A DNA stretch of 64,000 bases from Fimbriosthenelais zetlandica (taxonomy: Eukaryota), in NCBI GenBank assembly GCA_977030845.1, contig OZ365116.1, positions 20,646,001 through 20,710,000 of the forward strand. Direction: 5' to 3'. The translations under genes and the position numbers were made by a program. The stretch's first letter is position 1; every line of letters begins with the position of its first letter. Below, one piece after another: positions 9,938 through 11,332 of this stretch. The notes beneath the pieces were generated by a model. The model searched no databases. It had not been told where the DNA came from and saw only the letters and a program-made list of their open reading frames with translations.

Positions 9938-10197
9938 GCTTATGTCGGCAAGGGACCAAATTTTGCTAAGGTAGAAGGCCAACAGCAAGCTATATACCTG
10001 TCAAAAATCCAATTTGAGCAGGTATATAACCTAGTCTAATTAAAAAACGTAGAAACCAGTGTTCTTAAATGTGGCAATTCAATATTGTGAATCACAAATA
10101 CAATATATGAACACAAAGCATGGACAATAGACAACAATAAGACAATGTTAATGAAAGGTAAAAAAAGATGTCAACATGAGGGTGAGCATGAGTTTAC

Positions 10198-11332
10198 CTG
10201 TCCTCTGCTTTGGTAGTTGTAATTGCTTTATAATGTGATGTTTCTGGGGTAGGAAGGGCAACATCCACTGATGAAGACCGGGGTTGTTTAGGTACGTCCA
10301 ACATACCAGGGTCAAAGGAACCCCGGCGCTCTTCCATGATGTTTCCACCAACAGAGAGATATGCGGCATCCATGGAAGATGAGCGCGGTTTCCATAGAGG
10401 CACTGTTAGGGTGACAACACTACAGCCTTCTTCCTCACTGGGGTCTCTAGATAACTCAGCTGGTGATAACACACCTGAATCCCGGTCAGGAGGTGGGGTC
10501 AAGGCCAGCTTTACATGACACCCACTAACACCAGCTTCTGAATCATCGTCATCCGAATCCTCGCTGCTCAGGTCATCATCCAGCGAGTCGTACGTGAAAC
10601 TTGAAATGCGCATTTTGTTCAGGTCAAATTTATTGTCCCCCGGAGATGTGGGTGAGGTCTCCTGGCTGGAGGCATTCAACGCCTCGAGGTGAACACAGTG
10701 TATGCACAACCGGGGGATCTCCAGCGACTTCCTCCGGTAGTACTTGGGTAAGGCGAGGAAGAATGAAGAGGATGTCTCCTTATCAGAAACATACTCCTCA
10801 GAACTGTATGAAGCATCAAATGACTTGGAACGATACGTTTCAGGCACAGCCAAAGTACAATCTACCTCTCCAGGTCCATCGTGGTGAAGTGTGCTGGTGT
10901 CGAAGCTGGAGGATCGTATCCGGGGTAGATGGGGCACCTCTAGGCTGTTGGAAGATGACATTGGGGGTGCTCTATGTTTGGGGGTTGGGGGTAGCTGCGG
11001 ACCACCCTCCATGGTTATACAGGGCTCGTGGTAGGACCGGTTACTACTACCAGTACTACTGGCAGGACTGTCGGCCGGTGTGGAGGTGGAGGGACTGGGT
11101 TGTTGGGGAGAAGGCCCTCCAGGGTAGGTGTCCATGCACGTTCCCGTGCTAGTGACTGTCACAACAGTTCCCTCTGACTCCTGCTGCCCACCCAGGCTGA
11201 GGCTGGAGTCTACAGGTGGAACCTCGGTCCTCTTCTGTCGTGACAGACACAGCTTTGGAATGTCGAATGACGGGGAGCGGGAGCGGGCCTTCTTGAAGAG
11301 ATTCATCTTGGAGTTGGACGCAACCATGTAGG
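10198..11332 (-). CDS. rdgA: large 1135-nt exon encoding the rdgA-like disordered N-terminal regulatory region of the DGK (phase 1 to phase 2)
   Basis: 377-aa ORF 11327-10194. Acceptor tcttttcactttttaag|CCTACATG at 11333/11332. Donor GACAG|gtaaac at 10198/10197, and the ORF stop lies inside the donor. rdgA-like motifs: CIHC, RSSSVD, YKAI. Confidence 0.9.

What the first reader, a model, noticed from the sequence alone, without database searches (positions are those of the whole stretch)
10263..10943. Repeated LxVP plus basophilic phosphosite module in the DGK N-terminus: a candidate multivalent calcineurin/kinase switch
Seen: the large exon encodes six copies of one protein-level unit, with no obvious DNA repeat. 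They are L129EVP..RSSS141FD, L159AVP..RSKS169FD, L191ALP..RRKS201LE, L307TVP..RSSS318MD, L324SVG..RRGS337FD and L343DVP..RSSS353VD. The L-to-serine distance is 12, 10, 10, 11, 13 and 10 residues. Known: LxVP is the calcineurin (PP2B) docking motif, and RxxS-hydrophobic fits PKA/CaMKII/PKC-type sites and possible 14-3-3 sites. As I recall, Drosophila rdgA has similar units (LEVP..RSASFD, LTVP..RSRSVD). Inference: each unit couples a phosphatase dock to its own phosphosite, so Ca2+ from PLC signalling could reset DGK activity or localisation. I am not aware of this being described for type IV DGKs, but cannot check.
Basis: partly seen in the sequence, partly recalled or inferred. Interest (0 to 1): 0.75.

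Follow-up and report, generated by a model that had tools for sequence, protein, structure and literature searches.

The report
Repeated calcineurin-type phosphosite modules in DGK
The disordered N-terminus of this invertebrate diacylglycerol kinase (the orthologue of fly rdgA) carries a repeated two-part motif, conserved across molluscs, worms and insects, that looks like a docking site for the calcium-activated phosphatase calcineurin placed next to its own phosphorylation site, though binding is untested.

Summary
The minus-strand exon (window 10198-11332) opens the long isoform of a type IV diacylglycerol kinase (zeta/iota/rdgA class). None of 200,000 shuffles matched this.

Both halves are deeply conserved. 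In 52 sequences from molluscs, annelids, a nemertean, insects and horseshoe crabs, the LxVP core averages 0.89 identity and the site core 0.88, against 0.28 for the rest of the exon. No sampled deuterostome protein has them.

The region is predicted disordered. Three window units pass the published calcineurin LxVP scoring matrix at the level of the classic RII substrate. The order LxVP, linker, R-x-x-S is that of RII and TAK1, two validated calcineurin substrates.

Caveats:
- The "LSVG" unit is not a conserved LxVP.
- The linker is short (6-9 residues, against 9 in RII and 13 in TAK1).
- No PxIxIT motif was found.
- Calcineurin binding is untested.

Verdict: a conserved bipartite motif array (near certain) and a plausible multivalent calcineurin/basophilic-kinase switch (about 45%). 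I found no prior description.

The parts
10198..11332 (-). Large 1135-nt exon that encodes the disordered N-terminal region of the long isoform of a type IV DGK. The ORF ATG is at 11325-11327; the conserved probable start codon M8 is at 11304-11306.
   Evidence: The ORF appears. An AG acceptor lies before 11332 and a GT donor after 10198 (read). Argonauta DGK zeta-like (P0033) maps by tblastn from this exon on to the C1, catalytic and ankyrin exons downstream. The DAGK_cat exon is 36 kb downstream. The exon is single copy in the genome.
10899..10943 (-). Unit 1: L129EVPHLPRIRSSS141FD. There are 8 residues between P and S0, and the site has the form RxRxxS.
   Evidence: Residues confirmed. LxVP PSSM score for NSLEVPH is 30.21. 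In 52 sequences P132, R138, S141 and D143 are invariant, and L129 is 0.98, V131 0.94 and F142 0.98.
10815..10853 (-). Unit 2: L159AVPETYRSKS169FD, with 6 residues between P and S0.
   Evidence: Residues confirmed. PSSM score for CTLAVPE is 27.54, lowered by Cys at -2. L159 and P162 are invariant; V161 is 0.96, S169 0.94 and D171 0.94.
10719..10757 (-). Unit 3: L191ALPKYYRRKS201LE, with 6 intervening residues. It is an L-x-L-P variant, followed directly by IPRLCIHCVHLE.
   Evidence: Residues confirmed. PSSM score for FFLALPK is 20.02, which is poor. Conservation: L191 0.83, P194 0.88, R198 0.94, R199 0.92, S201 0.98.
10368..10409 (-). Unit 4: L307TVPLWKPRSSS318MD, with 7 intervening residues.
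   Evidence: Residues confirmed. PSSM score for VTLTVPL is 31.84, the best in the exon. P310 is invariant. L307, V309, R315, S318 and D320 are 0.98, and K313 is 0.94.
10311..10358 (-). Unit 5: L324SVGGNIMEERRGS337FD. It is a phosphosite with only a degenerate, unconserved LxVP-like half.
   Evidence: Residues confirmed. PSSM score for AYLSVGG is 13.54. Conservation of the LxVP-like half: L324 0.42, V326 0.33, G327 0.35. Conservation of the site: R334 0.62, S337 0.69, D339 0.65.
10263..10301 (-). Unit 6: L343DVPKQPRSSS353VD, with 6 intervening residues.
   Evidence: Residues confirmed. PSSM score for GMLDVPK is 30.83. Conservation: L343 0.90, P346 0.81, R350 0.96, S351 0.96, S353 0.98, D355 0.94.
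11262..11279 (-). Extra N-terminal site R17SPSFD with no LxVP before it, followed by IPKLC.
   Evidence: Found. The block MNxFKK..RSxSPSF[DE]IPKLCLPRQKR is conserved. In several relatives LCLP/LEVP..RQKRSTSID forms a further unit here.
10683..10718 (-). I204PRLCIHCVHLE215. The C-x-H-C is invariant and starts the only confidently predicted helix in the exon (209-222). It is not part of the repeated unit.
   Evidence: C208, H210 and C211 are invariant in 52 sequences. Block-mean pLDDT is 71 for residues 201-210 and 87 for 211-220. PxIxIT PSSM score is only about 16.5.

Best explanation
**What it is.** The exon encodes an intrinsically disordered regulatory N-terminus of the long isoform of the protostome type IV diacylglycerol kinase, the orthologue of Drosophila rdgA. 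The region carries an array of four to six copies of one bipartite short linear motif. Each copy is a hydrophobic/Thr-L-x-V-P element, a 6-9 residue linker, and an R-S-x-S-hydrophobic-D site.

**How it most likely works (inferred).**
- Each R-x-x-S-hydrophobic-D is phosphorylated by a basophilic kinase. The form R-x-x-S/T-V-D matches CaMKII's own substrate sequence MHRQETVD. RxRxxS and RRxS also fit AGC kinases such as PKA.
- The upstream LxVP docks Ca2+/calmodulin-activated calcineurin at the CNA/CNB groove, which presents the nearby phosphoserine to the active site. This is how the PKA-RII peptide and TAK1 are handled.
- A Ca2+ rise after PLC activation would then strip several phosphates from the N-terminus and change DGK activity, localisation or partner binding. 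That would link Ca2+ to removal of diacylglycerol.

**Shown here:** the motif array, its conservation, the coupling and spacing of its halves, the predicted disorder, and the match to published calcineurin motif definitions.

**Not shown:** phosphorylation, calcineurin binding, and any effect on the enzyme.
For: **Not chance.** None of 200,000 shuffles reached the observed count.

**Gene identity.** The downstream exons match the C1, catalytic and ankyrin parts of an Argonauta DGK zeta-like protein that ends in ETAV. Relatives are annotated DGK zeta-like, eye-specific DGK or retinal degeneration A.

**Conservation.**
- 60 of the 62 hits carry 1-6 units.
- In alignment A1 (52 sequences) nearly all invariant columns are motif positions.
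- Mean identity is 0.89 for the LxVP core, 0.88 for the site core, 0.49 for the linker and 0.28 for the rest of the exon. Mann-Whitney p is 8e-10 and 5e-12.

**Coupling of the halves.** In 105 long isoforms, 89% of 463 sites have L.[VLI]P 9-18 residues upstream of the serine. Random placement gives 11%.

**Linker length.** Over 295 distinct units the linker is 6 residues in 55, 7 in 89, 8 in 107 and 9 in 29.

**Disorder.** AF2 pLDDT is about 40-59 over the units in the exon model and about 30-37 in a full-length Octopus model. The units do not dock on the folded domains.

**Calcineurin-specific evidence.**
- The Wigington et al. LxVP PSSM (10.1101/632547) scores units 1, 4 and 6 at 30.2, 31.8 and 30.8. 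The validated RII motif EDLEVPV scores 30.64 (p = 4.2e-5; the paper's cut-off is p <= 1e-4).
- The five LxVP of D. melanogaster rdgA score 33.5, 33.3, 32.4, 31.0 and 28.9.
- The residue before L is L, T, S, F or Y in 79% of 411 distinct units, and 84% are residues the PSSM favours.
- In RII (LDVP, 9 residues, RRVpS) and TAK1 (LDVP, 13 residues, RRRpS) the same order, LxVP then basophilic site, is used. Both have been crystallised on calcineurin, and Arg at -3 helps (PMC3582496; PMC13022171).

**Kinase.** MHRQETVDCLK is used as a CaMKII substrate (PMC11088445).
Against: - No binding or phosphorylation data exist for any of these proteins.
- The linker is shorter than in validated examples. It is 6 residues in window units 2, 3 and 6 and in 19% of all units. 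Grigoriu et al. modelled phosphosites within six or fewer residues of the LxVP as unlikely to reach the active site, and gave 9-15 as the working range.
- None of the six window units meets the stricter Sheftic pi-phi-LxVP expression at both flanking positions. That expression, however, misses 16 of 25 validated peptides according to Wigington et al..
- No PxIxIT motif reaches the published threshold in any full-length relative.
- Asp at +2 and Ser at -2 are almost invariant, and nothing known about calcineurin explains this. They point to a kinase or a phospho-reader.
- The LxVP PSSM is dominated by the L, V and P core, so any conserved L-x-V-P would score about 30.
- Human DGKZ and DGKI are absent from the published calcineurin network tables.
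Confidence: 0.45

Rival explanations
1. The R-S-x-S-hydrophobic-D sites are mainly phospho-dependent binding sites for a reader such as a 14-3-3 dimer, which needs two sites. That reader would hold the kinase in the cytosol or in an inactive state. In this reading the LxVP half serves something other than calcineurin. This rival can also coexist with calcineurin acting as the eraser.
For: Arg at -3 and Ser at -2 are nearly invariant in units 1, 4 and 6 (S139 0.98, S351 0.96). That is the R-S-x-pS core of the 14-3-3 mode I motif (own knowledge). Several sites lie in one disordered chain, which suits a bivalent reader.
Against: Mode I has Pro at +2. Here +2 is Asp in nearly all copies (D143 in 52 of 52, D320 in 51 of 52, D355 in 49 of 52). 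A 14-3-3 site does not need a conserved L-x-V-P at a fixed 6-9 residue distance, yet 89% of sites have one.
Confidence: 0.2
2. The whole 14-17 residue unit is one bipartite motif read by a single partner that is not calcineurin and is so far unknown. Examples would be a kinase that docks on L-x-V-P and phosphorylates the serine next to it, or a scaffold of the signalling complex.
For: The linker length is tightly bounded (6-9 residues in 95% of 295 units, never 5). The linker is more conserved than background (0.49 against 0.28). K313 and the hydrophobic pair after P310 are conserved in unit 4. The spacing is shorter than in validated calcineurin substrates.
Against: To my knowledge, no known docking motif other than calcineurin's has an L-x-V-P core. 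The preference for F, Y, T or L just before the Leu is the calcineurin preference. The orientation and the Arg at -3 match RII and TAK1.
Confidence: 0.2
3. The units are intramolecular elements that fold back onto the C1, catalytic or ankyrin domains of the same kinase as pseudosubstrate-like autoinhibition, released by phosphorylation.
For: Regulatory N-termini that fold back on the catalytic core are common in lipid kinases (own knowledge). The end of the exon (residues 355-369) does form a confident hairpin.
Against: In the full-length AF2 model of the Octopus protein, residues 1-346 stay at pLDDT about 30-37 and no unit docks on a folded domain. The exon alone is also disordered. This is weak evidence, because the alignment has only 52 sequences.
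Confidence: 0.07
4. The pattern is a compositional accident of a Ser/Pro/Arg-rich disordered exon and has no function.
For: The exon is 17% Ser and 10% Pro.
Against: None of 200,000 composition-preserving shuffles reaches the observed counts. The motif positions are the most conserved columns across phyla that split more than 500 million years ago.
Confidence: 0.01

Closest known systems
PKA RII-alpha substrate peptide (81-DLDVPIPGRFDRRVpSVCAE-99), the classic calcineurin substrate
   Same: It has an L-x-V-P N-terminal to an R-x-x-S-hydrophobic site in one short disordered stretch. Arg at -3 and the LxVP are both needed for dephosphorylation (PMC3582496). Its LxVP PSSM score of 30.64 is similar to units 1, 4 and 6.
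   Different: RII has one copy, not four to six. Its linker is 9 residues, against 6-9 here (mode 7-8). It has no Asp at +2 and no Ser at -2. RII relies on AKAP79 to bring calcineurin close.
TAK1/MAP3K7 422-LDVP-425 ... 436-RRRpS-439, crystallised on calcineurin (PDB 9NXF; PMC13022171)
   Same: It is a composite of an LxVP and a basophilic PKA-type phosphosite downstream. Both parts contact calcineurin, and the basic residues add affinity.
   Different: The linker is 13 residues and partly disordered. There is a single copy. The i-1 Arg that fills the E282 pocket is only sometimes present here (RSRS or RSKS in some units).
NFAT-type calcineurin substrates (PxIxIT plus phi-LxVP)
   Same: They share the phi-L-x-V-P core with F, Y or T before the Leu. 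Fly rdgA has FLQVP, FLEVP, YLMVP and FLTVP.
   Different: NFAT has a strong PxIxIT and a single LxVP far from, and C-terminal to, its phosphoserines. No PxIxIT above threshold was found here.
Vertebrate DGK zeta: long (muscle-type) N-terminus and MARCKS-like PKC phosphosite region
   Same: It is the same enzyme class, and it also has a disordered segment rich in basophilic serine sites that regulates it (own knowledge). Fish and shark long N-termini have many RRRS or RRNSS sites.
   Different: Sampled vertebrate, echinoderm, hemichordate and amphioxus proteins have no L-x-V-P units. The exon profile does not detect them either.
14-3-3 mode I motif R-S-x-pS-x-P
   Same: It shares the R-S-x-S core, and several copies lie in one chain.
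   Different: Position +2 is Asp, not Pro, and each site has a coupled upstream LxVP.

Membership tests
Type IV diacylglycerol kinase (DGK zeta / iota / rdgA) | Two C1 domains, DAGK catalytic and accessory domains, C-terminal ankyrin repeats and a PDZ-binding tail. | tested here: met
   The DAGK_cat exon lies on the same strand 36 kb downstream. Argonauta DGK zeta-like, which ends in ETAV, maps by tblastn in order from this exon through C1, catalytic and ankyrin exons. Relatives carry PF00130, PF00781, PF00609 and ankyrin Pfam domains. The last exon with the PDZ tail was not located in this genome.
Calcineurin LxVP docking motif | An L-x-[VLI]-P core in an intrinsically disordered, accessible region. 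| tested here: met
   Units 1, 2, 4 and 6 have L-x-V-P and unit 3 has L-x-L-P. Unit 5 (LSVG) fails. AF2 predicts disorder over all units.
Calcineurin LxVP docking motif | Flanking-residue preferences, scored by the Wigington et al. 7-position PSSM with cut-off p <= 1e-4. | tested here: inconclusive
   Units 1, 4 and 6 score 30.2-31.8, which corresponds to p of about 2e-5 to 5e-5 by the paper's own table. Units 2, 3 and 5 score 27.5, 20.0 and 13.5. Fly rdgA scores 28.9-33.5. 84% of 411 units have a favoured residue at -1. None of the six window units meets the stricter Sheftic expression [NQDESRTH][YTDFILV]LxVP at both flanking positions.
Calcineurin LxVP docking motif | Evolutionary conservation of the motif relative to its disordered surroundings. 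| tested here: met
   The L, V and P columns average 0.89 identity against 0.28 for the rest of the exon.
Calcineurin LxVP docking motif | Physical binding to the CNA/CNB groove, lost on LxVP mutation and blocked by cyclosporin or FK506 complexes. | not testable with these tools
   No calcineurin A or B sequence could be obtained. This needs wet-lab work or AF-Multimer.
RII/TAK1-type composite calcineurin substrate | LxVP N-terminal to a basophilic phosphosite with Arg at -3. | tested here: met
   All units have this order. R-3 conservation is 0.85-1.00 in units 1-4 and 6.
RII/TAK1-type composite calcineurin substrate | A linker long enough for the phosphoserine to reach the active site (9 in RII, 13 in TAK1; 6 or fewer modelled as unlikely). 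| tested here: inconclusive
   The window units have 8, 6, 6, 7, 9 and 6 intervening residues. Over 295 units the counts are 55 with 6, 89 with 7, 107 with 8 and 29 with 9, and none with 5. So 81% exceed the modelled exclusion limit, but most are shorter than any validated case.
Calcineurin PxIxIT anchoring motif | P-x-[FILV]-x-[FILV]-x with a PSSM p <= 1e-4 (a score of roughly 19-20 or more). | tested here: not met
   The best scores in 14 full-length relatives are 12.9-18.2. IPKLCIHCVH scores about 16.5 and is predicted helical. The insect SPxIE[LF] scores 16-18.
14-3-3 mode I site | R-S-x-pS-x-P. | tested here: not met
   R-3 and S-2 are present, but +2 is Asp or Glu, never Pro.
CaMKII-type basophilic phosphosite | R at -3, a hydrophobic residue at +1 and an acidic residue at +2, as in the substrate MHRQETVD. 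| tested here: met
   The sequence pattern is met in all seven sites, and the CaMKII substrate sequence is in PMC11088445. Which kinase acts cannot be tested here.

The most novel reading that the evidence does not exclude
The long isoform of the protostome type IV DGK, including Drosophila rdgA, is a direct multivalent calcineurin substrate. Four to six RII-like modules, each an LxVP plus a CaMKII/PKA-type site at near-minimal spacing, would form an ancient Ca2+-decoding switch dating to the protostome ancestor. The switch would couple PLC-evoked Ca2+ to removal of diacylglycerol. In fly photoreceptors that would be a missing Ca2+-dependent feedback onto the lipid arm of phototransduction.
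Probability: 0.3. Interest if true: 0.8.

Novelty: new variant of a known kind. Interest (0 to 1): 0.62.

Why it matters
rdgA is the DGK whose loss leaves fly TRP channels constitutively active and causes retinal degeneration. How its activity is tuned by the Ca2+ that phototransduction itself generates is, as far as I know, not understood.

A conserved array of calcineurin-type modules gives a concrete, mutable handle. Fly rdgA has five LxVP and four R-x-x-S-hydrophobic-D sites at defined residues: L80, L126, L156, L486 and L524, and S90, S139, S498 and S536 in the 1454-aa protein.

For calcineurin biology it would be the first tandem, near-minimal-spacing version of the RII/TAK1 composite. 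The sharp lower limit of 6 linker residues across about 300 natural variants is also a natural experiment on how close a phosphosite can sit to an LxVP.

If calcineurin does not bind, the array is still one of the best-conserved unassigned bipartite linear motifs one could hope to find, and its reader would be worth identifying.

Tried and rejected
**Searches and checks that gave nothing.**
- Literature: no paper holds both "LxVP" and "diacylglycerol kinase".
- The 3 of 6 papers listed for calcineurin plus rdgA do not link them, judged by title and abstract.
- The listed DGK-calcineurin papers are mostly T-cell signalling and NFAT papers, judged by title and abstract. In my reading the known link is transcriptional (NFAT to DGK alpha/zeta), and none reports direct docking.
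- rdgA plus phosphoproteomics gave nothing useful.
- The remembered CaMKII optimal peptide KRQQSFDLF is not in the library, so I cite only MHRQETVD.
- Human DGKZ, DGKI and DGKQ are not in the Wigington calcineurin tables.
- RNA evidence: no RNA run was listed for the exon.
- The look-up of encoding contigs on P0059 gave a 1.6-kb Logan contig with no taxon.

**Ideas considered and rejected.**
- PxIxIT motif: rejected.
- IPKLCIHC as a PxIxIT: rejected because of the low score, the predicted helix and the invariant Cys/His.
- DNA-level repeats: none.
- Paralogous copies in the genome: none.
- Deuterostome homologues of the exon: none among the sampled proteins or by the A1 profile. Isoform sampling could hide some.
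- Intramolecular docking: not supported by the full-length AF2 model.

**Not run.** Complex prediction with calcineurin was not run. No calcineurin A or B sequence could be obtained as an unaltered session sequence, and I did not type one from memory.
Full report
**1. What is in the sequence**

On the minus strand, window 10194-11327 is a 377-aa open frame. An AG acceptor lies just before 11332 and a GT donor just after 10198 (read). The exon is therefore 1135 nt, window 10198-11332.

A seventh site, R17SPSFD, has no LxVP in front of it.

Shuffling the exon's residues 200,000 times gave these results:
- R..S[FLMVIY][DE] sites: 0.11 expected, 7 observed, 0 shuffles reach it.
- L.[VL]P: 0.36 expected, 5 observed, 3 shuffles reach it.
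- Coupled units: 0.0014 expected, 6 observed, 0 shuffles reach it.

There is no DNA repeat behind the pattern. The exon is single copy in the 447-Mb genome.

**2. Which gene**

The window is C27:20646001-20710000. A DAGK_cat exon lies on the same strand 36 kb downstream.

An annotated Argonauta DGK zeta-like protein (P0033, 1185 aa, ending in ETAV) maps by tblastn in order. It starts in this exon and runs through the C1, catalytic, accessory and ankyrin exons.

Named relatives are DGK zeta-like in molluscs, a nemertean and a brachiopod. In insects they are eye-specific DGK or retinal degeneration A. So this is the type IV DGK, the rdgA orthologue.

The animal is a spiralian. Its DGK is about equally distant from nemertean, mollusc, annelid and brachiopod sequences.

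Annotated proteins start at the MNxFKK that is M8 of the ORF.

Many annotated isoforms of 930-1000 aa lack this exon. It belongs to an alternative long N-terminus.

**3. Conservation**

An exhaustive profile-free search found 62 relatives of the exon. All but two low-complexity hits carry one to six units of the form L-x-V-P, 2-9 residues, R-x-x-S-hydrophobic-D/E.

In a 52-sequence alignment spanning molluscs, annelid, nemertean, insects and horseshoe crab (A1):
- The invariant columns are P132, R138, S141, D143, L159, P162, P310 and the C208-x-H210-C211 block.
- The near-invariant list is almost entirely motif positions.

Mean column identity by class:

| Class | Mean identity |
|---|---|
| LxVP core | 0.89 |
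| Site core (R-3, S0, +1, +2) | 0.88 |
| Linker | 0.49 |
| All other exon positions | 0.28 |

Mann-Whitney p is 8e-10 for the LxVP core and 5e-12 for the site core against the rest.

It is clearly not met.

Unit 5 is the exception. Its LSVG half is not conserved (0.33-0.42), and only the site is moderately conserved.

**4. Coupling and spacing**

In 105 long isoforms, 89% of 463 sites have an L.[VLI]P 9-18 residues upstream of the serine. Random placement of the LxVP gives 11%. These sequences are related, so this is descriptive rather than a p-value.

The number of residues between the Pro and the serine, over 295 distinct units:

| Linker residues | Units |
|---|---|
| 5 | 0 (allowed by the search) |
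| 6 | 55 |
| 7 | 89 |
| 8 | 107 |
| 9 | 29 |
| 10 or more | 15 |

The linker is thus tightly bounded, with a sharp floor at 6.

**5. Phylogenetic range**

Units occur in molluscs, Capitella, Lineus, Lingula, many insect orders and horseshoe crabs.

D. melanogaster rdgA (P0203, 1454 aa) has these units:
- NSLEVPKQVRSASFD (L80, S90)
- GFLQVPLAAHQQRSHSFD (L126, S139)
- TFLEVPRRLKARRSSS, followed by CIHC (L156)
- IYLMVPDLKRDRAASVD (L486, S498)
- CFLTVPNINATRSRSVD (L524, S536)

Sampled echinoderm, hemichordate, amphioxus and vertebrate type IV DGKs have no units. This includes 1218-1346-aa DGK zeta isoforms. A profile of A1 does not detect their N-termini at E <= 10.

The module is therefore protostome-wide, but it is not a general type IV feature. 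Unsampled isoforms could change this.

**6. Structure**

AF2 on the exon with A1 gives mean pLDDT 52. Every unit lies in a low-confidence coil.

Only a helix at 209-222 (the CIHCVHLE block) and a hairpin at 355-369 are confident.

In a full-length Octopus model, residues 1-346 stay at pLDDT about 30-37 and no unit packs on a folded domain.

The units behave as short linear motifs in a disordered region.

**7. Comparison with calcineurin motifs**

*Published layouts.* Grigoriu et al. (PMC3582496) showed the following:
- Nine residues separate the Pro from pSer.
- Arg at -3 helps.
- They modelled phosphosites six or fewer residues from the LxVP as unlikely to reach the active site.

A 2026 study (PMC13022171) crystallised TAK1 on calcineurin, with 422-LDVP-425 in the LxVP pocket and 436-RRRpS-439 at the active site. 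It confirmed RII the same way.

The layout "LxVP, linker, basophilic site" is therefore a validated calcineurin substrate architecture. All units here have that order.

*PSSM scores.* The Wigington et al. LxVP PSSM (10.1101/632547, supplement 2) reproduces their published scores in my hands (NILDVPE 32.43). It gives:

| Unit | Peptide | Score |
|---|---|---|
| 1 | NSLEVPH | 30.21 |
| 2 | CTLAVPE | 27.54 |
| 3 | FFLALPK | 20.02 |
| 4 | VTLTVPL | 31.84 |
| 5 | AYLSVGG | 13.54 |
| 6 | GMLDVPK | 30.83 |

In their tables a score of 30.2-31.0 corresponds to p of about 3e-5 to 5e-5. The cut-off is 1e-4, and RII scores 30.64.

Fly rdgA scores 33.5, 33.3, 32.4, 31.0 and 28.9. The only other L.[VLI]P in its 1454 residues lies in the folded catalytic domain.

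*Flanking residue.* The residue before the Leu is L, T, S, F or Y in 79% of 411 distinct units, and 84% are residues the PSSM favours. That is the calcineurin "phi" preference.

*Points against.*
- None of the six window units meets the stricter Sheftic expression at both flanking positions. That expression misses 16 of 25 validated peptides.
- The PSSM is dominated by the core.
- No PxIxIT reaches threshold.
- Three window units have only six linker residues.

**8. The phosphosite half**

R-S-x-S-hydrophobic-D has R at -3, a hydrophobic residue at +1 and Asp at +2. This is the form of the CaMKII substrate MHRQETVDCLK (PMC11088445).

Unit 1 is RxRxxS and unit 3 is RRxS, which also suit AGC kinases. 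That assignment is my own knowledge and is not tested here.

R-S-x-S resembles the 14-3-3 mode I core, but +2 is Asp, never Pro.

**9. Verdict**

It is near certain that this is a functional, ancient, repeated bipartite linear motif.

The best reading is that calcineurin reads the LxVP half. LxVP is, to my knowledge, the only known docking motif with this core, and the flank preferences, orientation and Arg at -3 all fit. I put this at about 0.45, because of the short linker, the missing PxIxIT, the unexplained Asp at +2 and the absence of any binding data.

Rivals are a phospho-reader such as 14-3-3, an unknown single partner or docking kinase, and intramolecular autoinhibition.

I found no prior description.

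The scan's other note on this stretch (s1-223718) concerns the exon's splicing. I confirmed only the 1135-nt exon bounds.

Noticed in passing
window 10683-10718 (-), residues 204-215: IP[KR]LCIHCVHLE follows unit 3 directly. C208, H210 and C211 are invariant in 52 sequences from molluscs to flies. This block starts the only confident helix in the exon (209-222, block-mean pLDDT 71-87). It may be a metal-binding or acylation element; its function is unknown.
   Followed up: partly
window 11250-11279 (-) and 10704-10733 (-): Two copies of a second motif, R-x-x-S-hydrophobic-[DE]-I-P-[KR]-L-C (RSPSFDIPKLC at residues 17-27 and RRKSLEIPRLC at 198-208), both conserved in relatives. This is a different repeat from the LxVP unit.
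   Followed up: no
window 10221-10265 (-), residues 355-369: The end of the exon (DVALPT...HYKAI) is predicted as a confident beta-hairpin (block-mean pLDDT 85 for residues 351-360 and 92 for 361-370). L358, P359, T360, Y366 and A368 are at least 90% conserved. It probably belongs to the fold that precedes the C1 domains.
   Followed up: partly
window 11304-11327 (-): The ORF's first ATG (M1) is probably not the start. Relatives and annotated proteins begin at MNxFKK, which is M8. The first 26 nt of the exon would then be 5' UTR, or be joined to an upstream exon as another first-stage note (s1-223718) proposes.
   Followed up: partly
window 10953-11222 (-), residues 36-125: This species and its closest relative (P0001) carry a Ser/Pro/Thr-rich insertion of about 90 residues between the N-terminal block and unit 1. 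Most other sequences lack it.
   Followed up: no
P0123, P0133, P0151, P0157 (insect rdgA orthologues), residues about 200-240: Beetles and midges share a PxIxIT-like P-[ST]-S-P-x-I-E-[LF] inside the same N-terminal region. PSSM scores are 16-18, just under the published threshold.
   Followed up: partly
P0154, P0164, P0076 (shark and fish DGK zeta long isoforms), N-terminal 260-450 residues: The vertebrate long N-terminus is also rich in basophilic serine sites (RRRS, RRVS, RRNSS). It has no LxVP partner and no detectable homology to this exon. This may be an analogous, independently built regulatory region.
   Followed up: partly
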